Of a DNA stretch of 64,000 bases, positions 31,461-43,969 are shown piece after piece; positions within the stretch are counted from its first letter, which is position 1, and each line of letters opens with the position of its first letter. The notes under the pieces were generated by a model. That model was not told the origin of the DNA. It did not search any database and saw nothing but the letters and a program-made list of their open reading frames with translations. Location of the stretch: contig OZ281497.1 in assembly GCA_965637545.1 (NCBI GenBank), positions 29,016,001-29,080,000 on the forward strand, given 5' to 3'. This DNA is from Phallusia mammillata. Taxonomy: Eukaryota. Both the position numbers and the translations under genes were made by a program.

Positions 31461-32766
31461 CTGAAACATATAAACACAAAGCTGAACAGATTCCATATAA
31501 GTAATTCTTGGAAACATCTGTAATGTGGTTCAAAGGAATCTTTTCGTGTCCCAGTTTATGTGTTACATTGTAGGGGCAGCCTTGTATTACGGCAGAGGCT
31601 TATTTTTACGAGTCTATATTTAAAATTTACTCCTTGATTGGTGGGCCAACAGGACGATAAAGCCATTAATGGTGGGTATAAAGGTAATGTCCAGAAAGAC
31701 TGATACAATTTTAGAGACATGGTCTTTTACTGAATTTTATTGCACCATTTTTGACCCTGCGCAATATGTGTGTGTTACTCCGATCCAGGTTAATAGTAGA
31801 CACAATTCATTTTAATTCACAAAAAAAAAAACATTGTAGCTATAGTGCTCAATAGGTAAAGAGTTTTAATGTCGTAGGATTAGATGGACAAAAAAAGAAT
31901 TAATTTTCCCGTAATTGGCACAACCATTGAGAAAGCTTTCTGCACTATTGTTTACTGGGGATGAAAAACTTGTTCCATAAAAAAAGTTATGAAAAAATAG
32001 ATGATAATCTATTGTTTCACGAATAATAGTTGGTTGAAATCTTCAACAGCAAGGTAGCATATGAAACCTGACAACGATACAAGATTTGGGACTATTGAGT
32101 TAAACTTTTTGTTACATTTCATTGAAGAAAGCTAGCGTTAACCAAACTAAAAAAGTATTTTTAATTAGCAGACCAGTGTTTGTAATGAATATGGTACTGT
32201 TGATGTACAACCTGGAATGAAAATATTTTGAATAAGTATTTTAGTTAAAACATTTGTGTTTCACCATAAATTTTTATTCAATTTGCATGTAAGCTAATAC
32301 TTTTTTTTAAAGATTGTTAGTTTTAAGTGGACTTTCTAAAACTTCATTAAACAACATTCAAGGTTTAGATTTAGAAAATCTTCTAATTATAAGGTAGTGT
32401 TAAAAATTATTTGTTCAGTTGTTTGGGGTTTGCGGCTATTTAGTATCAAAATCTCATTTCTAACCTTGCAGTGTTTCGAACCCTGCATTGCTGCAGTGCG
32501 CTTTGCTTTGATTGTGCTGCAACACCCGATCCGTCTGATTTCAGACGCTTGAAACTGTCGAATTCTGGATAATCCCGTGCCTTTATGCTGTCGTATTATA
32601 ATCTGTGTTAAGGATTCTTTCTTTAAAAGAAATGCGCTGCACAGTGCACGGAAAAACATAGAAGGGAATTACCCTTTATGCTATCCGTCGGCTGCGGCTC
32701 TTAAATGACAAATGATATCGTTGAAATTGCTGAAACCTGTAACGTGCAAAAATAAAAAAAATAAAA

Positions 32767-35700
32767 ATGAGAAGTAAATGTGGAAGGTCTGCAAGTGGAT
32801 ATAACTTGTTTTGCGCTTCACTGAAAGGTGGTGGTAAGTAGTCATTAATTGTATAGTCATTTAAAAGTAAAGTTGTATAGGGATACTGTCAGTGGTGGGT
32901 TTCAACTTTTTTATCACTTTTTTATCAGCCGGTGCTATCACAAAAGTCATATTTTTTGCTGATTTTGTTACAAAAAGTCTATTGACAGTAACCAGTAATG
33001 GCAACCAGTTCGCAGATCCCATAAAATTTTATGGACCGATTGCAACCAGCTGAATCCCACCACTGGGCTCTGGATACAGTCATGCAATGGTTCTTTGACA
33101 CATTAATAGTGGAATACGCCCAATGACAGCATATGTGCCACACAAACCCCTGTTTATTTAGGTGTTTAGCTATCATAGCCCAATGGTCTACTTTTTGTTT
33201 ATCTGGAACTTTGGTGCAGAAAAATTTAATCATACACATGTCCATTCATTACCCCCGGACCTTTCCCCTTTGAATTCTTAAGTAAACAGTTTATTGCTCA
33301 AGTGACTATATGGCCAATGTTTGGCTCTCACTAATTCTGTTGCTCAGTTGTTATGTTCCTTATTATTTGGTTTGTGCAATTTGTTTAAATCAAAGCATGA
33401 CAAATAAAACAGTGAAATTAGTAAACACCTGTGGACCTGAACTACTGTGCCATTGGTGTGTGTTTATCTGATCTTTTTTCTGTTATATATGACATATGTC
33501 GGTGGGTGAAAAAAGAGTTAAGAAAACTAAACAATTACAAATTATATATCCAGTTACTACTTCCTGGAGTATAACCATTAACAAAGCTTTGCTGTTGAAT
33601 TATATTTAATAATATTTCAACCTTTACATATATTTATACAAGATTAATATGCTGATTCAACTGGTACTTTTTGACTTATAAGACATTTAGATTATGAAAA
33701 ACATGTTTATGTGGTTCCCCAGGCTGTTTACCGCTTAGGCTCTTAATAGTTAAACTTGAACTCTTCCAGTCACTGTCAACATGTATATATTGAAGCTATT
33801 TACGAAGTTACAGAAGTTACAGTGTAGCTGTAAACGTTTTTTCAAAAGAATTTTTTAAATTAAATATTGGCATAGTGACATTGAGTCTTGACTCGCCTTG
33901 TTTTTAAGCAGTTGCTTGGTCATAGTGGATGCAGTTTCCCTGTGGCTTATCCCAATTTGCGGCATCAAACTGATATGGCATGACATGTCAATTAAGCCTG
34001 TTACTTCCAATAAACTGCAGTACATTAAATGTAGCTACACTAGCCTATACAGTCAACTGTATGAGTTTGATAGAGTGGGCACTGTCTGCAGCTTAACTTC
34101 TAAATTGTTTCAGAAATTTCTACATTTGGTAAAGAATGGCAGAATTTATCAGAAAGTGAAAAAAATACTTGGAAGGAAAAAGCCAAGCAATCAATTCAAC
34201 CTAATATGACAGAAAGACAACAGAAATCATACATAAAAAGACAGACAGACATGATTACACACTGTGTGAGTGACATTATGATGTTATAAACAAGTAATAA
34301 GTTTGAGAAATGCTTAAGTAGGTTGTAGATTTTAGTGAAGAGTTAACTACAATATCTAATGCAGAACACTATCATACTAGTGCATTCTCTTAGAGCAAAA
34401 ATCTGGAGAAAGTAAATGTAGAGGTTGTGGGAATGGTGCTGAAGAGTGGTGTGTTGCAAGTATTTGGAACTAATAAATCTGTGCAATGGTTGGAAAACAC
34501 AATTGATGTCCAACGACAATTTGTATGCAATTCCCACTTAGGTAATGATAAATATTTGTTAAGCTAAAAAGAAGAAGCAGTTTTCCATGCTTGTATACCT
34601 CTTTTTATTTACAGATGGTTGTAACACAGTTGAGAATACTTTAAGAGAAAACTTACGTAGAATGGTCCAAGATTTATTTAATTCAAAGTACTGTAAGTTG
34701 TTTTTACTTACATAGTTTTAACAATTTTTTTAGCTGCAATGTTTAATTACAGCGGAAGCTGTTGGCAAAGCTTCTCGAGTTCCGTATAAGAAAAGAAATT
34801 ACACAGTTACTGGTTTGCCGGAAGGTGTCTCTTTTTCAAAACCTTCGAAATATGGGGTTCTTAAACTCAAACAAATTTTGTCAGTTAAGGAAAACATAAT
34901 GTTTACTGTTGACCGGTATGTATACACTTTTGTTTTTATATCATTGATCAATGTTGGTTTGTCATTTACTGTAAAAACTGATGTATTATTGTGTTTTTAG
35001 GATTGCTACAAATATAGAATTGGGAAAAAACTCTGAAGGTAATCTATCTCTGCAACATAACAAAACACCACTCTTACTAAGGTTTTCATTTTAAATACAG
35101 TAAAATGGCATATTTAAAATTACCAGTATATATAATGAAATCATTTTCACACATTCAATTTCCTACTTTTTTAATGATATTATTGTATTTAAGATGATCA
35201 AATTCCTAATGACGCTCAACAAAATGTTACCATGGAAGGAGATGATCAACATGTTGCTGAGGGTAATTTCATTTATTTCAGTTACTATTTGATAAACTGC
35301 CAAACGCTATTTCATAGCAGTACATCTAGTAAACATGCACTTATAATGGGCTAGTTATGTAAAATTTTTGTTTAATTACAGAGCAAGAGGAAGAAAATAC
35401 TGTTACTGCTGAAAGTTCAAACGAAACTAACAAAGAACACCTACAAAGTCAACCGGGTAAAATATGTGTTTTAAATCTTTTAGTGTTTTGCTGTAATATG
35501 CTTTGTGTTCCAGTGTGCCAAATGCAAACAAAATCATGACGCTGGTGGCCACAAGTGCAATAAGCATACATAGATGTAGGCTTACATTACAGATAACAGA
35601 AACTTAAGAAAGGTTAATTCCAATATTAATTATTTTTAACTTCGCTTAAGCTCATTGTGACACAAAAAAGGAAAGCTGAATAAAAGGACGTATCTATTTT

Positions 35701-36102
35701 TGTCCATTGATGTGTAACAGCTAATTTTGTAACCCTTTTGTCTATTTACGTATGTTTTAACATTTAGATGGAAGGAGATTAAAGAGAAGAAAAAAGGGAA
35801 AACCATTTTCAAAAAGAAAAGTCTCTAAATCAAAATGTAAGGTCATGTTACATTGTCAGAACTTTTTTAAATGACGTACTTACGTTTTGTAACACTTATG
35901 TTCGTCACTATCACAAATCGAATGCTTGGTTGTTTTTGTAGGGACCCCAAAACAACTAGACACTCTACGCAATGAGCCTGAAAACTATTGCTCGGGTTGC
36001 GGAGAATTTTATTACACCAGCACACAAGAAAATGAAGACTGGGTTATGTGCGCTTGTGGTTCATTTCATCACGAGTTTTCGTGCCAGTGCCACTGCAAGT
36101 AG
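32767..36102 (+). CDS. Transposon accessory protein, ~339 aa: HMG box + GTF2I-like I-repeat + acidic linker + basic NLS + PHD-like finger; exons 32767-32833, 34114-34265, 34394-34541, 34615-34692, 34753-34915, 35001-35038, 35194-35262, 35382-35456, 35768-35836, 35942-36102
   Basis: Ten GT-AG exons join in frame with no stop (1020 nt). HMG: RSASGYNLFC..GKEWQNLSESEKNTWKEKAK. I-repeat: LRRMVQDLFNSKYSEAVG..VPY..VTGLPEGVSFSKPSKYGVLKLKQILSVKENIMFTV. C-terminus: YCSGCGEFYY..EDWVMCACGSFHHEFSC. Confidence 0.88.
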
Positions 36103-36940
36103 GAAGTAGCCCAATACATTGCATTCAATAAAAGAAAAAAATCGTTTTACTTTGTGCATTCGTTGTTTTTTTACTAAGATTGGGAAAAGTGAAAAAAGGG
36201 CTAAAACCGCAAACCGGCGTACCCCACTTAGCAAGAGTACCTCACTTAACCCATGCCATAACAGGAAATAAGCGATGGGACTAAATAGGGCCTTAAACAA
36301 GGGCTAAGCATGCATTTTCGCGGTTGGTATATGCAGACTAAGTGACCTTAGCGTAAGCTAAGCGAGCTAAGTGTTGGCTGCGCAGGCTGAGGTAGCTCGC
36401 AGTTTTAACGGGATCCAAGACTTGTGAAAAACATAAAATAGATTAAAATGATGTGATGTTGAGGCATGGATATGTGACAATAAAGAGAGTAAACATATTC
36501 AAAAGTAATGGAACGTACTGTCGTTTCAGTTTTTATGAGGTAAACAATATCAACAACACCAATAGCCAGCAACAAATTACAAATTTCCAGGTGTTAGTTA
36601 CTCACTGTACCATAACAATGGTTTATTACGTCACTATTGATAGTTGTTGACGAATTTAAAAACAATGATTATTCAACGCACTTAAGGTTTTGACTGGTAG
36701 TAAAAATTAACGCAATTCCTTCCCTTGCATGCAACCTGTATATAAACACCCAAAAGGAAGGGTAATGAATAAAATTTGTTGACAACTTGTAGTGTTACAA
36801 ATCAAAACGCCCAACATTGCCAGTTCAATTAGTTTAAATACCTGGTTTGGCAAAGAATAGTGGCCTGCCATAAGTCATAATGCGTGTCTGTTTTTTTAGT
36901 TTAAATTTACCTCAGTTTGTTTGTGTGAGCCGGTCGTTCT

Positions 36941-38586
36941 ATCTTTAACCGTACGTGTTTTGTAGTCGATTGGGCTTAGCCGCACAGACAACTAGTAATA
37001 ATTCAGGCGGTCGTGCCCTTCATTTCATGACGATGCACGCTTCTCATTTTTGATTCTCTTATTGAAGTAACCTGAAACTTTGCAAGCTGTTGGTGACTGC
37101 AATTATAAATTGGCTAGTGAAAACCGTTTCGTTTTATCTTTAACCGTTCGTGTTTTGTAGTCGATTGGGCTTAGCCGCACAGACAACTAGTAATAATTCA
37201 GGCGGTCGTGCCCTTCATTTCATGACGATGCACGCTTCTCATTTTTGATTCGCTCATTGAAGTAACCTGAAACTTTGCAAGCTGTTGGTGACTGCAATTA
37301 TAAATTGGCTAGTGAAAACTGTTTCGTTTTATCTTTAACGGTTCGTGTTTTGTAGTCGATTGGGCTTAGTCGCACAGACAACTAGTAATAATTCAGGCGG
37401 TCGTGCCCTTCATTTCATGACGATGCACGCTTCTCATTTTTGATTCGCTCATTGAAGTAACCTGAAACTTTGCAAGCTATTGGTGACTGCAATTATAAAT
37501 TGGCTAGTGAAAACCGTTTCGTTTTATCTTTAACCGTTCGTGTTTTGTAGTCGATTGGGCTTAGCCGCACAGACAACTAGTAATAATTCAGGCGGTCGTG
37601 CCCTTCATTTCATGACGATGCACGCTTCTCATTTTTGATTCGCTTATTGAAGTAACCTGAAACTTTGCAAGCTATTGGTGACTGCAATTATAAATTGGCT
37701 AGTGAAAACCGTTTCGTTTTATCTTTAACCGTTCGTGTTTTGTAGTCGATTGGGCTTAGCCGCACAGACAACTAATAATAATGATTCGGACGGTCGTGCC
37801 CTTCATTTCATGACGATGCACGCTTTTCATTTTTGATTCGCTTATTGAAGTAACCTGAAACTTTGCAAGCTGTTGGTGACTGCAATTATAAATTGGCTAG
37901 TGAAAACCGTTTCGTTTTATCTTTAACCGTTCGTGTTTTGTAGTCGATTGGGCTTAGCCGCACAGACAACTAATAATAATGATTCGGACGGTCGTGCCCT
38001 TCATTTCATGACGATGCACGCTTTTCATTTTTGATTCGCTTATTGAAGTAACCTGAAACTTTGCAAGCTGTTGGTGACTGCAATTATAAATTGGCTAGTG
38101 AAAACCGTTTCGTTTTATCTTTAACCGTTCGTGTTTTGTAGTCGATTGGGCTTAGCCGCACAGACAACTAGTAATAATTCAGGCGGTCGTGCCCTTCATT
38201 TCATGACGATGCACGCTTTTCATTTTTGATTCGCTCATTGAAGTAACCTGAAGCGTTGCAAGCTGTTGATGACTGCAATTATAAATTGGCTAGTGAAAAC
38301 CGTTTCGTTTTATCTTTAACCGTTCGTGTTTTGTAGTCGATTGGGCTTAGCCGCACAGACAACTAGTAATAATTCAGGCGGTCGTGCCCTTCATTTCATG
38401 ACGATGCACGCTTTTCATTTTTGATTCGCTCATTGAAGTAACCTGAAGCGTTGCAAGCTGTTGATGACTGCAATTATAAATTGGCTAGTGAAAACCGTTT
38501 CGTTTTATCTTTAACCGTTCGTGTTTTGTAGTCGATTGGGCTTAGCCGCACAGACAATTAATAATAATGATTCGGGCGGTCGTGCC
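36941..38586. repeat. Tandem array of a 195-bp unit (198 bp in two units), ~8.4 copies
   Basis: Unit starts (atctttaac) at 36941, 37136, 37331, 37526, 37721, 37919, 38117, 38312 and 38507. Confidence 0.95.
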
Positions 38587-38857
38587 CGGTAGAGCTACTA
38601 ACACCATAACGAGAATCAGAACTTCGCTTTCACAAGGGGGCGTAAAGAGCTGAATTTTTACTTAGCGGCTATAAATGGGTTGGGAAATAATTACATACAA
38701 TTTTTGCATTAGTAACTAATTTTTGGGTTAGTTTTATTGAATTTTAAGTGCTAATACCTTACTCCGATCCTAATAGCCCTAACCGTGAACATTTTTGGAG
38801 ATACAACTAACCACATTTGGGTGTGTGATTCTCGTTATGGTGTTAGTAGCTCTACCG
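38587..38857. mobile_element. MITE-like element, 271 bp, abutting the tandem array
   Basis: Perfect 32-bp TIR CGGTAGAGCTACTAACACCATAACGAGAATCA; no TSD visible. Confidence 0.8.
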
Positions 38858-39347: not shown

Positions 39348-42300
39348 TTAATCCTCATCATCACTTTCATCCGTTGAATAGTCAGCACATTCTGGTTCCA
39401 AAAAAGGAATAATTTGAGGAGTTTCAAGGGAGTTTGAGGAAGTAGGCAATTCAAGATGTTCAGCGAAACTGCCTCTTAAGTTTTGCACAAGGCTTTGAAC
39501 TTTAAATTTTTGGCAAATCAAGTAGGAAGATAAATTACCATTGATTACAATTTCTCTCTCAAGTTGACAAATTAGTTGCTCATTAAACTGTAATACACTA
39601 GTCATTTCCCTTTTTACTATGACAATTTCTTCCTTTGACCTTTCCATAACAAAGTATCTGTCAAGTATTTTTTGAAAAGAATCTTGCTGTGTAGCATTTG
39701 GTATGTCATTAGGCTTTACAAAAATATCTGCAAGTGTTACTCTTTCAGGGCATTTGGTGACTTCAATGCCTGACATTGTGTTGTACTTCTTGATTAACTT
39801 TTTTGTTACCAATGTGACCCTTTTCATATTTTTGGATATCTTGTCAAAAATTGCTTGTCCAGCTATAGGAGGCAAAAAGAATAGTTTGTTCACTTGGCTG
39901 CAATATCCCCTATTCTTCTACTATACTATTTTCTGCTGTAATTATGATTAGTATTTGTTTCCAACATGATTTGGTAAACCAATCTATCTGAAAACTTACA
40001 TGAATACTTCCGTATTAAAGTTGAAAGGAAACTGCGTTCAAAGTTCTGACATTGCAACTTAACCAACAACTCCTGCCTTTTCTTTTCTGCTGCAGTCACT
40101 AGTAACAAGTCTAGTTCTTTCAAACTTAAGTTCTGAACACTTCCTTTTTTTCTTGATCCTTCAAGTTGTTTCTCTAACCTGTACAAAAGGCATTAGTATA
40201 GTGCTGTTATATTTGGCTAATTAAAGTTTTTCCTAAAACTGTAATATGCTAAATTTATACTACCTGGCAACCTGGCCTGTCAAGTCTAAGACCTCTGTAC
40301 AATCTGAATTTCCTTGAGTTTCAAGTGCATTAATACGAATTCTGTAAACAAAGAAAAATTGAGTGCTATTTATAATTGTTCAAACTGCAGTAAAACCATT
40401 TTAAACCTGTTTGCATTTAAATCGTGCATTTTTAATGCATATTCCTCTTTGTGTGAAAGTTTTAGCTCTTTGCATGCATCACTGATGACATAAGGGCATT
40501 TAGAAGCATTTTCTACCTCTGAAAGAGACAGTCCTCCTGTAAAAGTTTGTATTGGGTAAATCAATAAATTGACAAAATTAAGCTATAGTATATCAACTAA
40601 AATGCTGTTAAAAATAACCTTCAGTGTTGTTTTAAAAAAATACAGACCTGGATAGGATTCCATCATCAGAGAGAGCTCAGCTTCAGCCTGATGCAATGCA
40701 ACTTTAGCATTACTTAACCTTTGAACCAATATAGACCCTGCAAAGTGTTTTTTTAATAAATAAATTTTTACATATTTTTTCATATTATACTTAACCAACT
40801 TAAACATTGTTCTACCCAGGTTAAACTTTATTTTTCTTCCATAATGTAGGAGTGCATCAGTTAGTAAATCAATTCTATGTTCTGGTTTCATTTCTTTTGT
40901 TATTTTGGCAAATTTCCGTAGATATGACCAAAGTCTTTCAACAGTTTCTCCCTCTGTTAGTCCAAATCCAACTTTTCGCCTAGGGCTGTATTGCATCTGG
41001 ATTTTAATTAAATTTGAGTGTTAGAATTACTGTTTACTTTGTTTTACATGTAAAACCTCAGGTCATTACCTGGCATGCAACATTATGACCATAGCCATGA
41101 AAAATAGGCACAGCAAAAATGAACTTGTTTAAATTTGATGCAGGTAGTCGAATCTAAACCAATATATGAGTATATCTGGTTCGTAGTTAAAAAAGAAAAA
41201 CCCATCCCTGGCATACATACCTTTATGTGTTCCTGTAGTTTACATGCTATATCATAAAATATCTTTATGTCTGCATTTTTGTTTTGTTCCATAATTTTTT
41301 TCAAACAGAAAACTGGATAACCTAGCCTGGGCGCATTGACAGGCTAGCATTGAAAAAAACAGCAAAATGATTATAAAGCAGTTACTAACCTCTCCCCATG
41401 TTTCATATCAACAAACAATTTCGGATATGCATGCTTACAACATACACCAAAAATTCCTTTTACATCAAGTTTAGCTATTTTGTTGACAGAGCGGATTTTG
41501 GTTCCAGCTTTAAAATCACTACACATCTACACAAAAACAAAAACGTACTCACAGATTAGATAAATATGTTCTTAAATGTGTTTTTATTTGGATTTTACTG
41601 TTTTTGATGCTGTGTCATGAGCATAGCTGTTGACAAAGCCATCCACTTGCTCTTCATTAACAAAAAACAGGCCATTATGATGGGGAGAAGCACTACTTTT
41701 GCCAGCAGCCCTTCTTCTTACTAAGCCAAAATTTCCATCAAAGCAATACATATCTTCACATGTTGGATCCTAAACGTATTAAATTTCCTCATCAATTTCC
41801 AACTATGCCACTTGCTAATCTTTTGGTAACAAGTAAAACAACTACCCCTTTGCACGCTGGACATTGGGACCCATTGTCATTCAAATTTTGTAAAATTGAG
41901 GGCAGGTTGTTTTGAATTTGATAGACATGGTGTCTGTAAGATTCAAGGACTTCATTTAGCAAAATCTTCGAAAGGTCTTTTATCTGCTAAGTTTAAACAG
42001 CTTAAAAGTTTATCCTTTCAAGACTACCATAGATGTACATTTACCAAACAATTATATCCTGGTGTATTTTCATGCAACATTGTCATTGCAATGCAAAATC
42101 CATGAGTGGAAACCTGTTGTTCGAGACTAAGGGTACGGATAAATTCCATTAAATTAATGCTCACGGCTACCTTTGGGGAAACTGGTGAGCATGGCCATAA
42201 ATTGTACCTTAAAAGAGTGGCACTTTCCTGCTCACAGGAGCAAAATTCTGCTACTGCCAAGTGTTGAAATCCTATAAACAATATAAATTCAATTTTGAAA

Positions 42301-42911
42301 AGGTCATTGCTTTAAATGCACTGTGATAAATCACCTTTACTGTCTATTACAGTTAGTTTCTTTTTGTGCAATGTTGAGCAATGATGGCCATCACTTCGAT
42401 GCAAACAAACATCGTTTAGTTTTTTTTTGACAAACATGTTGTCCTAAATGAAATTTTGCATGAAATGTTAAATAAATTCAAAATCAAGAAAACAGCATAC
42501 CTGCCAAACATCTGGTCTATGGAATAGAACAAAGCAATGGACCTCCTCCCAGCATGAAACACAATAATAGGCATTCCAACCACAATCTTGGCATCTCAAC
42601 CCGTCTGTTTTAAAGTCCAAGCTAATTTTACATCGTGAACAGACACATCTTTCAGGATAACGAAAATTGCCTATTTCAACATTAAGGAGGTCTTTTTCCA
42701 ATTCCCTCCACCTTAGACTTAAAGTGGATCTTTTTTCGGCATAAGAAGAAGGTTCACAAGGGAAAGTACTGACTTCATCCTGAACTGAACTCTTCGTAGT
42801 ATCGGATTCATGCCTATTTTGCGATAAATATGAGCTACAAAACAGTAAGCACTTCTTCTTTTTAACACTTTTTATTTTGTACAGTGACGATATTTTTCTT
42901 CACCTAGGCAT
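39348..42911 (-). CDS. KDZ transposase with N-terminal CxC zinc-binding region, ~852 codons, 14 exons: 42911-42501, 42443-42335, 42271-42045, 41986-41846, 41769-41599, 41526-41390, 41326-41221, 41153-41070, 40996-40816, 40737-40648, 40536-40407, 40341-40264, 40178-40000, 39862-39348
   Basis: Motifs RCQDCG..YCVSCWEEVH..FHRPDVW, FCSCE..LLRYNLWP.SP, CPAC, CFDGNFGLVRR, CKHAYP..DMKHGER, FYDIAC, VPIFHGYGH..CQ, GFGLTEGETVERLWSYL. All phases are consistent. The only lesion seen is a TGA at codon 4 (MPR*RK). Confidence 0.92.
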
Positions 42912-43485
42912 AGCAAGACCAAGAAAAAACTAACAGCTGAAATACGTATGCCTGAATATGTGGAAGATTGATAAAATTGTCATTAGATGGTGAAGGTAAT
43001 TCGGAAATGCAGCCTTTAGGTTTAGAGTTAGGGAAACTGCCCATCCAAAACCGGGAACCACCCTACACAAAACAGGCTAAAGTTGCGACTTTTAAGCGTA
43101 GAATCCCTAATACAGGTTATAATACAACAGCATCAAGGCCCGAGATTACTCAGAATTCGACAGTTTCAAGCGTCTAAATCAGACGGATCGGGTGGCTGCA
43201 AATATGTGACGTAATATTAACACAGGAAGGTTGGATCGGCACTGAATGCTGACGTCAGTTAACATACTACTTGTTGCAATTTTTATTAATTATATGTGGT
43301 CATCGAAATTATTGTTTGAAAGTAAAGACAAACGCTCAAAGCTGTATACGTAATTGAAGTATTTTTGACTGTACTTGTCCATTAGGGTGGCCACCACACG
43401 CACCTTCGATCGCATTGTGAGTTACCATATTTTTTGTTATTTTCGTTGATAGTTAGTACAGTTAATCATTACAAAATTGTCAAAA

Positions 43486-43546: not shown

Positions 43547-43599
43547 GTAAGTGGTTTTAAAAAAAATTTCTTCAAAAATGTCTACTGATAGAAGTAGAG

Positions 43600-43969
43600 T
43601 TCTTTGCAGTTTCGTGATCAAGCGCTGCAACCACGTAGAAATACCTGGTGCTTTCTGATGTAATGCTTCTCAGGGCAAATTGTGCTTCAGCCTGTTGAAA
43701 CCATACGCGTGGATTGGAGGTCCAAAAAGTTGGCAATTTCAATGTAACTGCATGTTGCTGTTGGGCTTCTTCTGGATTAGACATAGTATTCTTACAAATG
43801 CCGTTTGTAAGCTTCGGGGTCACCAAATGTGGCGAGCGTTAGCTGTTTATTTCGCGACGTCCAAAATAGAATGAATAAATACAAAGTGTCATACAAGCGA
43901 AGAAAGAGAACACGAGAAAAGGGCACATTTAACACGCTTTGATAAATGCGGGTCGGCAGAGTCGCTACA
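43600..43969 (-). mobile_element. Ty3/Gypsy LTR retrotransposon 5' relic: short LTR (~43969-43828), PBS, gag start
   Basis: TGTAGCG...CGCCACA followed by PBS TGGTGACCCCGA (matches the tRNA-Trp 3' end); gag reads MSNPEE..LKLPTFWTSNPRVWFQQAEAQFALRSIT..RYFYVVAAL. Confidence 0.8.

What the first reader, a model, noticed from the sequence alone, without database searches (positions are those of the whole stretch)
32767..36102. Unusual domain fusion: short HMG box + I-repeat + acidic linker + NLS + atypical PHD finger
Seen: the HMG box has a very short helix1-helix2 connection (YNLFCASLKGGEISTFGKEW). A K/R cluster (GRRLKRRKKGKPFSKRK) precedes a C-terminal CxxC..DWVMCxC..H..C with extra CxHC residues. 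The ORF is uninterrupted across 9 introns, suggesting recent activity or selection. Inference: it combines DNA-bending, DNA-binding and histone-tail reading.
Basis: partly seen in the sequence, partly recalled or inferred. Interest (0 to 1): 0.7.

Follow-up and report, generated by a model that had tools for sequence, protein, structure and literature searches.

The report
Transposon partner gene: short HMG plus I-repeat
This is a real, expressed 339-residue gene of the sea squirt Phallusia mammillata that rides inside a KDZ-type DNA transposon. Its HMG-box plus TFII-I-type repeat module is shared with KDZ transposons of soft corals, so it is probably the element's own DNA-binding helper, while the proposed histone-reading PHD finger is not supported.

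Summary
A 10-exon, 339-aa gene (32767-36102, +) has nine GT-AG introns. Spliced contigs from four studies confirm every junction, and the product is identical to a public Phallusia mammillata protein.

The I-repeat is certain (Pfam GTF2I, 71 bits). The HMG box is real at family level, but this copy lacks 11 residues of helix 1 and the following loop and falls below Pfam's cut-off. The acidic linker and the K/R cluster are as described.

The Cys/His tail got no PHD support from Pfam, from PDB sequences or from three fold searches. Its ligand spacing departs from the PHD pattern at four of seven intervals, so histone reading remains speculation.

The fusion is not a one-off. HMG + conserved middle region + I-repeat proteins (30% identical, E 8e-28, first four introns in matching positions) sit convergent to KDZ transposase genes in the octocorals Dendronephthya and Xenia. 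One copy there has 42-nt inverted ends, just as this gene lies between 107-nt ends with a 7-bp target duplication.

Best reading: a conserved DNA-binding/architectural partner protein of a KDZ transposon lineage with a lineage-specific zinc tail. No searchable paper links GTF2I repeats to KDZ elements. The scan had already noted this same stretch (KDZ element, I-repeat), not other DNA.

The parts
32516..32522 (.). Left target-site duplication GCTGCAA
   Evidence: The same 7 nt directly flank both inverted ends.
32523..32629 (+). Left terminal inverted repeat of the KDZ element (about 107 nt)
   Evidence: the repeat finder I6 (19 nt, 100%) plus I1 (90 nt, 84%) pair it with 43089-43194. There is one indel after position 19.
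32767..32833 (+). Exon 1: start codon and HMG-box N-terminal strand plus shortened helix 1 (aa 1-22)
   Evidence: Gene model. In-frame stops lie upstream of the ATG. Junction 32832>34113 is seen in 4 runs. R7, Y12, N13 and F15 are invariant in the family.
34114..34265 (+). Exon 2: HMG-box helices 2-3 (aa 23-50) and the start of the conserved middle region
   Evidence: Pfam HMG_box sub-threshold, aa 18-49. The family profile hits solved HMG boxes.
34394..34541 (+). Exon 3: conserved middle ('X') region, aa 74-122, fold unassigned
   Evidence: It aligns with cnidarian homologues. No Pfam or PDB sequence match.
34615..34915 (+). Exons 4-5 (34615-34692, 34753-34915): GTF2I-like I-repeat, aa about 131-203
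   Evidence: Pfam PF02946, 71 bits, E 1e-19. Exon 5 alone scores 50 bits. PDB 2DZR E 8.6e-12.
35001..35456 (+). Exons 6-8 (35001-35038, 35194-35262, 35382-35456): acidic linker, aa 204-263
   Evidence: 16 D/E against 2 K/R in 60 aa. The junctions are confirmed. No homologue found.
35768..35836 (+). Exon 9: basic K/R cluster (NLS-like), aa 264-287
   Evidence: 14 K/R in aa 264-290. Nuclear import is inferred from composition only.
35942..36102 (+). Exon 10: Cys/His-rich tail (C303...C338) and stop codon
   Evidence: Ligand positions. No Pfam, PDB or fold match to PHD. No relatives by word search.
36127..36132 (+). AATAAA polyadenylation signal
   Evidence: Contigs end at 36112-36145.
36934..38587 (.). 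195-bp tandem array (8.4 copies, 97% matches) between the two genes
   Evidence: Tandem Repeats Finder. It shares no 9-12-mers with the element ends.
39348..42701 (-). KDZ transposase gene (multi-exon; only ORF pieces were examined)
   Evidence: Pfam hits are colinear on the minus strand: CxC1/CxC2 at 42024-42281, then KDZ profile positions 4-48, 53-100, 108-136 and 166-213 at 41584-41751, 41371-41526, 41083-41304 and 40583-40996. The pieces are 38-67% identical to Dendronephthya KDZ genes.
43089..43194 (-). Right terminal inverted repeat
43195..43201 (.). Right target-site duplication GCTGCAA

Best explanation
The gene is the second (non-transposase) gene of a 10.7-kb KDZ-superfamily cut-and-paste transposon in Phallusia mammillata.

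Its N-terminal two thirds hold an HMG box, a conserved middle region of unknown fold and one TFII-I-type I-repeat. This is an old module that travels with KDZ transposases in at least two phyla. It most likely acts as the element's own DNA-binding and DNA-bending partner. On this reading the I-repeat recognises element DNA, the HMG box helps bend the ends into a synaptic complex, and the basic cluster takes the protein (and perhaps the transposase) into the nucleus, as the Myb-like protein of PIF/Harbinger elements does.

The acidic linker, the basic cluster and the Cys/His tail were added or replaced in the ascidian lineage. The tail is probably a small zinc-binding module, but it is not a demonstrable PHD finger.

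Shown: gene structure, expression and splicing, domain identities, position inside inverted ends with a target duplication, and conserved linkage to KDZ transposase. Inferred: every biochemical role.
For: - Gene and splicing.
- Inside the element: inverted ends 32523-32629 and 43089-43194, with a perfect 7-bp duplication.
- KDZ transposase with CxC domains, convergent on the minus strand.
- I-repeat. HMG at family level.
- Homology to the Dendronephthya protein P0039 over aa 7-252 (30% identical, E 8e-28) and to the Exaiptasia protein P0061 (E 1e-24).
- The first four intron positions coincide within about 3 residues with those of the P0039 gene (one search set).
- The same layout, with the I-repeat gene on one strand and the KDZ gene convergent on the other, occurs at Dendronephthya loci L001, L002, L004 and L006 (L003 is a partial copy that ends before any KDZ gene). 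It also occurs at L013, a second and more divergent family, and in Xenia at L007.
- Dendronephthya copies are about 99% identical over about 13.5 kb. In L002 they are bounded by 42-nt inverted repeats that enclose both genes.
- In the I-repeat tree P0011 falls with the invertebrate and KDZ-linked repeats, split from all vertebrate repeats with support 95/92.
Against: - No experiment or binding-site evidence ties the protein to the element's DNA. GGATTA, the known GTF2IRD1 core, occurs in the left end only, and the ends share no motif with the 195-bp array.
- Only one Phallusia copy was seen, and the protein is a singleton cluster, so selection among copies could not be measured.
- The HMG box is truncated and below Pfam's threshold, and its single-sequence model is unreliable (pLDDT 50).
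- Two contigs start 11-38 nt outside the left end, so transcription may be driven from flanking DNA.
- Some cnidarian I-repeat genes (Pocillopora, loci L008-L012 and L014) and the sea-urchin gene (L005) have no KDZ neighbour.
Confidence: 0.6

Rival explanations
1. Chromatin-reader accessory protein. The C-terminal finger is an atypical PHD that reads histone H3 tails and steers the transposon or its transposase to particular chromatin, as the RAG2 PHD does.
For: Language-model neighbours of exon 10 are PHD clusters (0.82-0.88). The stretch C-x2-C-x16-C-x-C-x4-H resembles the first three quarters of the PHD pattern, with W-V-M-C before and F-H-H after the second pair (direct reading). A sea-urchin I-repeat protein, P0021, ends in a chromodomain, so joining an I-repeat to a chromatin reader has a precedent.
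Against: There is no Pfam PHD hit even at E up to 10 and no PHD among PDB sequences. Foldseek, VIA-align and the Atlas find no PHD or other zinc finger for the model. The spacing departs from C4HC3 at C3-C4 (1 residue instead of 2-4), H-C6 (3 instead of 2), C6-C7 (1 instead of 12 or more) and C7-C8 (1 instead of 2). The tail has no homologue in the cnidarian proteins or by word search. PHD-like cross-brace fingers in transposases, such as the piggyBac C-terminal domain, can bind DNA rather than histones (own knowledge).
Confidence: 0.1
2. Passenger or captured host gene. A host HMG/I-repeat transcription-factor gene was picked up by, or merely enclosed between the ends of, a KDZ element and has no role in transposition.
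For: Transposons do capture host genes. NCBI names the protein 'GTF2IRD1-like'. Only one copy is seen. Two contigs begin outside the left end.
Against: The same gene-plus-transposase layout occurs in two octocoral genera and in two divergent Dendronephthya families, with matching intron positions. This is hard to explain by independent capture. The repeat does not group with vertebrate GTF2I repeats.
Confidence: 0.12
3. Element-encoded regulator. The protein is a transcription factor or anti-silencing factor that controls expression of the element (or of host genes) and is not a structural part of the transposition complex.
For: TFII-I family I-repeats and HMG boxes are classic transcription-factor domains (own knowledge). 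An acidic stretch of 60 aa could be an activation region. An in-frame isoform that skips exons 2-3 removes most of the HMG box and the middle region, which suggests regulated forms.
Against: Nothing distinguishes this from the architectural-cofactor model with the present data, and no binding sites were identified.
Confidence: 0.15

Closest known systems
Vertebrate TFII-I family (GTF2I, GTF2IRD1, GTF2IRD2)
   Same: It has the same I-repeat domain (Pfam PF02946 71 bits; solved repeats of GTF2IRD1 and TFII-I at E 1e-8 to 9e-12). GTF2IRD2 also joins I-repeats to a transposase-derived part (an Atlas cluster carries the FAM200/GTF2IRD2 domains).
   Different: It has one repeat instead of 5-7 and an HMG box in front. 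It is encoded inside a mobile element. Its repeat falls on the invertebrate side of a 95/92-supported split from all vertebrate repeats.
Cnidarian HMG + I-repeat proteins next to KDZ transposases (Dendronephthya XP_028416357 = P0039, P0040, P0049; Xenia P0126; Exaiptasia P0061)
   Same: The order HMG box, conserved middle region, I-repeat is the same, with 30-31% identity over about 200-250 residues. The first four introns sit in the same places. The octocoral genes lie convergent to a KDZ gene; the Exaiptasia gene could not be located.
   Different: The cnidarian proteins have a full-length HMG box and an unrelated C-terminal domain of about 190 aa in one exon. P0011 has an 11-residue HMG deletion and instead carries an acidic linker, a basic cluster and a Cys/His tail in five extra exons. 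Most Dendronephthya copies also carry a kinase-like gene.
Two-gene DNA transposons with a DNA-binding partner (PIF/Harbinger Myb-like protein; En/Spm TnpA; RAG1L/RAG2L ProtoRAG)
   Same: A transposase gene and a second gene for a putative DNA- or chromatin-binding protein lie between the same inverted ends. They are convergent, as in ProtoRAG (own knowledge for those systems; layout here).
   Different: The transposase superfamily differs (KDZ) and so do the partner's domains (HMG + I-repeat instead of Myb/SANT, TnpA or kelch + PHD). No functional test exists for the KDZ partner.
KDZ (Kyakuja-Dileera-Zisupton) transposons carrying TET/JBP genes in fungi
   Same: The transposase superfamily is the same, with CxC cysteine clusters, and the element carries an extra gene acting on DNA or chromatin (PMC12730594 abstract; Pfam).
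   Different: The extra gene here is a DNA-binding protein, not a dioxygenase, and the hosts are animals. That paper does not mention HMG or GTF2I.
PHD finger (PF00628)
   Same: It is rich in Cys/His, and C-x2-C ... C-x-C-x4-H with flanking hydrophobic and aromatic residues recalls the first three ligand pairs. The language-model neighbours are PHD clusters.
   Different: It fails the sequence profile, the spacing rule and the fold searches.

Membership tests
GTF2I-like repeat (PF02946) | Score above Pfam's gathering cut-off over the whole 75-position profile | tested here: met
   71 bits against a cut-off of 27; aa 136-203 cover profile positions 1-75.
GTF2I-like repeat (PF02946) | Sequence similarity to experimentally solved I-repeat domains | tested here: met
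   Ten solved repeats of GTF2IRD1, TFII-I and GTF2IRD2 at E 8.6e-12 to 3e-7.
HMG box (PF00505 / PF09011) | Score above Pfam's gathering cut-off | tested here: not met
   P0011 scores 19.4-20.1 bits against 25.4, and only aa 18-49 align. Homologue P0039 just passes HMG_box_2 (22.6 against 22.4).
HMG box (PF00505 / PF09011) | Family-level homology to solved HMG boxes | tested here: met
   The profile of alignment A2 hits TFAM box B at 7.8e-8, UBF at 7e-7, Abf2 at 5e-5 and HMGB1/3 at 3e-4.
HMG box (PF00505 / PF09011) | Complete three-helix domain of about 70 residues | tested here: not met
   There is an 11-column gap in helix 1 and the loop relative to all homologues, at the exon 1/2 junction. 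The core residues R7, Y12, N13, F15, W31 and L34 are kept.
HMG box (PF00505 / PF09011) | L-shaped three-helix fold | tested here: inconclusive
   The single-sequence AlphaFold model has pLDDT 49.7. Helices fall at 9-19, 23-31 and 36-47, but there is no significant fold match.
PHD finger (PF00628) | Profile match | tested here: not met
   No PHD family listed at E up to 10 for exon 10 or for the whole protein. No PHD among PDB sequences at E up to 10.
PHD finger (PF00628) | C4HC3 ligand spacing (C-x2-C-x8-21-C-x2-4-C-x4-5-H-x2-C-x12-46-C-x2-C; recalled from knowledge of the family) | tested here: not met
   Observed: C303-x2-C306-x16-C323-x1-C325-x4-H330-x3-C334-x1-C336-x1-C338. Four of the seven intervals lie outside the range.
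PHD finger (PF00628) | Cross-brace two-zinc fold | tested here: inconclusive
   The model (pLDDT 70, no alignment, no zinc) matches no zinc finger in Foldseek/PDB, in VIA-align against 48,161 chains or in the Atlas. The model itself may be wrong.
PHD finger (PF00628) | Binding of histone H3 tail peptides | not testable with these tools
   This needs a peptide array or ITC.
KDZ-superfamily DNA transposon | KDZ transposase domain with CxC cysteine cluster | tested here: met
   PF18758 pieces are colinear over profile positions 4-213, and PF18802/PF18803 score 39-40 bits.
KDZ-superfamily DNA transposon | Terminal inverted repeats and a target-site duplication enclosing the genes | tested here: met
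   Inverted ends of about 107 nt and a perfect 7-bp GCTGCAA duplication.
Two-gene transposon with an obligatory DNA-binding partner (Harbinger-like logic) | The partner gene is conserved with the transposase across copies and species | tested here: met
   Six complete loci in two octocoral genera (plus a partial seventh) and this ascidian locus share the layout.
Two-gene transposon with an obligatory DNA-binding partner (Harbinger-like logic) | The partner is required for transposition or binds the element's ends | not testable with these tools
   This needs transposition and binding assays.

The most novel reading that the evidence does not exclude
The I-repeat, the DNA-binding domain of the vertebrate TFII-I/GTF2IRD1 family (Williams-Beuren region genes), may belong ancestrally to the partner gene of a KDZ transposon lineage that is still mobile or recently mobile in cnidarians and tunicates. 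The vertebrate family would then have arisen by domestication and internal duplication of such a gene. The conserved middle region may be a further cryptic DNA-binding fold. The Atlas's structural neighbours for aa 50-124 are I-repeat-bearing proteins at TM 0.72-0.80 and MADS-box proteins at 0.52-0.63.
Probability: 0.2. Interest if true: 0.8.

Novelty: new variant of a known kind. Interest (0 to 1): 0.55.

Why it matters
KDZ transposons of animals are barely characterised. Extra genes in this superfamily are described mainly for the fungal elements that carry TET/JBP.

A conserved, intron-bearing partner gene with two DNA-binding domains, shared by ascidian and octocoral elements, would define a two-component KDZ lineage. 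It would also give a concrete protein to test in transposition assays.

The result also places a domain known almost only from vertebrate transcription factors of medical interest inside mobile DNA of the vertebrates' sister group. That makes the question of where the TFII-I family came from directly testable. In the library searched, no paper holds both 'GTF2I' and 'KDZ'.

Tried and rejected
1. PHD reading. A Pfam scan, a PDB sequence search and three fold searches of a single-sequence model gave no support.
2. Fold of the N-terminal 135 aa. The model is too poor (pLDDT 49.7) and its matches are meaningless.
3. Word searches for relatives of aa 1-125 and aa 275-339 returned only the query. 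These searches see only proteins of 186-593 aa that share exact 5-mers with the query.
4. Middle region as a cryptic I-repeat. hhalign against an I-repeat profile gives probability 0.4%. For the middle region as MADS-like, the only sequence hint is Pfam SRF-TF at E 0.047 on one homologue, and a PDB profile search found nothing.
5. Known GTF2IRD1 core GGATTA as a binding site. It occurs once in the left end and not in the right end. The ends and the 195-bp array share no 9-12-mers.
6. Other copies in the window: none.
7. The full spliced protein was never typed into a tool. It was reached through exon 5 as a reference, which returned the identical database entry P0011.
8. dN/dS among copies could not be done, because no second Phallusia copy was available.
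Full report
**What is there.** Reading 32000-37000 and splicing by script gives a plus-strand gene of ten exons:
- 32767-32833
- 34114-34265
- 34394-34541
- 34615-34692
- 34753-34915
- 35001-35038
- 35194-35262
- 35382-35456
- 35768-35836
- 35942-36102

All nine introns are GT..AG, and the open frame is 339 codons plus a stop. In-frame stops lie just upstream of the ATG, and AATAAA follows at 36127. The window holds no second copy.

A search with exon 5 alone against 1.84 billion representatives returned a 339-aa entry, P0011, that is identical to my model. It is UniRef A0A6F9DDM2 / CAB3251328.1, named 'general transcription factor II-I repeat domain-containing protein 1-like', from Phallusia mammillata. 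The window is therefore ascidian DNA.

**Expression.** Contigs from four public runs of four studies were laid on 32400-36400. They show every one of the nine predicted junctions with no mismatch, and one 1285-nt contig carries all nine.
- The runs are labelled 'RNA?' by guess. Intron-less contigs in small assemblies are what a transcriptome gives, and the likely genomic runs hold 0.91-0.93 of the stretch's sampled words, introns included.
- A second junction, 32832>34614, skips exons 2 and 3. That is 300 nt, in frame, and it was seen in three runs. It would remove most of the HMG box and the middle region.
- Two contigs begin 11 and 38 nt outside the left inverted end, so the promoter may lie at or beyond the element's edge.

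**Domains.**
- *I-repeat.* Pfam on P0011 gives GTF2I at 71 bits (cut-off 27) over aa 136-203. Solved I-repeats of GTF2IRD1, TFII-I and GTF2IRD2 match at E 9e-12 to 3e-7.
- *HMG box, this copy.* HMG_box scores only 19-20 bits (cut-off 25.4), over aa 18-49. PDB HMG boxes appear consistently but not significantly (E 0.14-0.5).
- *HMG box, family.* A five-sequence profile of this region from P0011 and its cnidarian homologues hits TFAM box B at 7.8e-8, UBF at 7e-7, Abf2 at 5e-5 and HMGB1/3 at 3e-4. The family's domain is therefore an HMG box.
- *The deletion.* In the alignment P0011 lacks 11 columns right after LFCASL, which is the end of helix 1 and the loop. The gap sits at the exon 1/2 junction, where the coral gene also has an intron. 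Loss by a shifted splice site is plausible. The invariant residues R7, Y12, N13, F15, W31 and L34 are kept.
- *Linker and basic cluster.* Residues 204-263 hold 16 D/E and 2 K/R. Residues 264-290 hold 14 K/R.

**The tail.** The ligands are C303, C306, C323, C325, H329/H330, C334, C336, H337 and C338.
- No Pfam family is listed for exon 10 or for the whole protein in this region, even at E up to 10.
- The only PDB sequence hit is a kringle domain at E 0.08.
- A word search of aa 275-339 finds nothing but the query.
- A single-sequence AlphaFold model (pLDDT 70) matches no PHD or other zinc finger by Foldseek, by VIA-align against 48,161 chains or in the Atlas.
- Language-model neighbours are PHD clusters at 0.82-0.88. 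The best hit, at 0.90, is an unnamed chordate cluster. The tool rates these as leads only.
- By direct reading, C-x2-C-x16-C-x-C-x4-H resembles the first three ligand pairs of a PHD finger. However, H-x3-C and the last ligands C-x-C-x-C leave one residue where a PHD finger has a loop of 12 or more.
- I put about 20-25% on a PHD-like zinc fold and about 10% on histone reading.

**Context.**
- The gene lies inside a transposon. Inverted ends of about 107 nt sit at 32523-32629 and 43089-43194. A perfect 7-bp duplication, GCTGCAA, flanks both ends.
- A multi-exon KDZ transposase gene lies on the minus strand. Its CxC1/CxC2 and KDZ profile pieces are colinear.
- A 195-bp tandem array lies between the two genes.

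**The key result.**
- Among the hits to exon 5 are single-repeat proteins of cnidarians. Dendronephthya P0039 and P0040 carry HMG_box plus GTF2I with the same spacing as P0011. UniProt calls Exaiptasia P0061 an HMG-box protein.
- P0011 aligns with P0039 over aa 7-252 (30% identical, E 8e-28) and with P0061 (E 1e-24). The alignments cover the HMG box, a conserved middle region and the I-repeat.
- The exon ends of the P0039 gene, taken from tblastn pieces, map within about 3 residues of P0011's introns 1-4.
- At Dendronephthya loci L001, L002, L004 and L006 the gene is followed by a convergent KDZ transposase gene. Usually a kinase-like gene lies between them. L003 is a partial copy of the same element that ends before any KDZ gene.
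- A more divergent Dendronephthya gene (P0049, locus L013) and a Xenia gene (P0126, locus L007) show the same convergent layout without the kinase gene.
- The Dendronephthya copies are about 99% identical over about 13.5 kb. In L002 they are bounded by 42-nt inverted repeats that enclose all three genes.
- The Phallusia transposase pieces are 38-67% identical to the coral ones.
- The HMG + I-repeat gene is therefore a conserved component of a KDZ transposon lineage in two phyla. Only the C-terminal third of P0011 is peculiar to it.

**Relation to vertebrate TFII-I.** A maximum-likelihood tree of 77 I-repeats places P0011 with the sea-urchin and cnidarian repeats, including the KDZ-linked ones. 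A branch with support 95/92 separates them from all vertebrate repeats.
- The tree is unrooted and the domain is short, so direction cannot be read from it.
- The ascidian gene is clearly not an orthologue of vertebrate GTF2I or GTF2IRD1.
- Some cnidarian I-repeat genes (Pocillopora) and the sea-urchin gene with two I-repeats and a chromodomain have no KDZ neighbour. They may be domesticated or independent genes.

**Mechanism.**
- *Best supported.* The protein is the element's DNA-binding and architectural partner. By analogy with HMGB1 aiding RAG and Sleeping Beauty, and with the Myb-like partner of Harbinger (own knowledge), the I-repeat would recognise element DNA, the HMG box would bend it, and the basic cluster would bring the complex into the nucleus.
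- *Limits.* None of this is shown. I found no shared motif between the ends and the 195-bp array, and the GGATTA core occurs at one end only.

**Middle region.**
- It has no Pfam or PDB sequence match.
- The Atlas's own model of aa 50-124 resembles parts of I-repeat proteins (TM by query 0.72-0.80) and MADS-box proteins (0.52-0.63).
- hhalign against an I-repeat profile gives no signal.
- It remains unexplained.

**Literature.** No paper in the searchable library holds both 'GTF2I' and 'KDZ'. Searches combining GTF2I, transposon, HMG and Zisupton, or I-repeat and invertebrate origin, gave nothing relevant. The 2025 paper on KDZ elements carrying TET/JBP does not mention HMG or GTF2I. Subscription papers, among them the original KDZ and Zisupton descriptions, were not searchable, so the claim of novelty is provisional.

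**Earlier notes of this scan.** The same stretch had been noted as a two-gene KDZ transposon and as an I-repeat inside a transposon. I confirmed both points independently.

**Verdict.** The real finding is a conserved HMG + I-repeat partner gene of KDZ transposons, here with a lineage-specific acidic, basic and zinc tail. It is a new variant of a known kind, with interest 0.55.

Noticed in passing
window 32890-33070 (intron 1): A short element with inverted ends (CAGTGGTGGG...CCCACCACTG) is extremely abundant in the RNA-like contig sets: summed depth reaches about 8,700 against 30-70 for the exons. Many loose ends run into unrelated sequence. It looks like a high-copy MITE that is transcribed in many contexts.
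   Followed up: partly
window 32832>34614: An alternative junction skips exons 2 and 3 (300 nt, in frame) in three of four runs. It predicts a 239-aa isoform that lacks most of the HMG box and the conserved middle region.
   Followed up: partly
window 34200-34620 (aa 50-124 of P0011): The conserved middle region has no family. The Atlas model resembles I-repeat-bearing proteins (TM 0.72-0.80) and MADS-box proteins (0.52-0.63). Pfam SRF-TF scores E 0.047 on one coral homologue, and hhalign against the I-repeat is negative.
   Followed up: partly
window 36934-38587: A 195-bp tandem array (8.4 copies, 97% matches) lies between the two transposon genes. Each unit holds a 32-33-codon GTG-started ORF. 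It shares no motif with the element ends.
   Followed up: partly
window 43572-43826 (-): An ORF with Pfam DUF7041 (57.8 bits) lies just outside the right inverted end. It is probably a remnant of another mobile element.
   Followed up: no
L002:7156-8792, L004:14526-16159, L003:10032-11668 (-): Dendronephthya copies of the related KDZ element carry a third gene of about 346 aa, with protein-kinase Pfam hits, between the HMG-I-repeat gene and the transposase. The Phallusia element has the 195-bp array at that place instead.
   Followed up: no
L004:1-6312: A long tandem array with a period of about 136 bp (copies 80-87% alike) lies about 3.6 kb upstream of the left end of one Dendronephthya element copy.
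   Followed up: no
L005 (Lytechinus pictus, protein P0021): A sea-urchin protein joins two I-repeats to a C-terminal chromodomain (Pfam Chromo, 51 bits). No KDZ gene is called within 10 kb. It is an independent case of an I-repeat joined to a chromatin-reader domain.
   Followed up: partly
L008-L012 (Tara coral metagenome scaffolds; protein P0139): A single-exon 265-aa I-repeat protein of Pocillopora-type corals occurs at one conserved locus in very many samples (indexed in 451 blocks), with no KDZ neighbour called. It may be a domesticated relative.
   Followed up: partly
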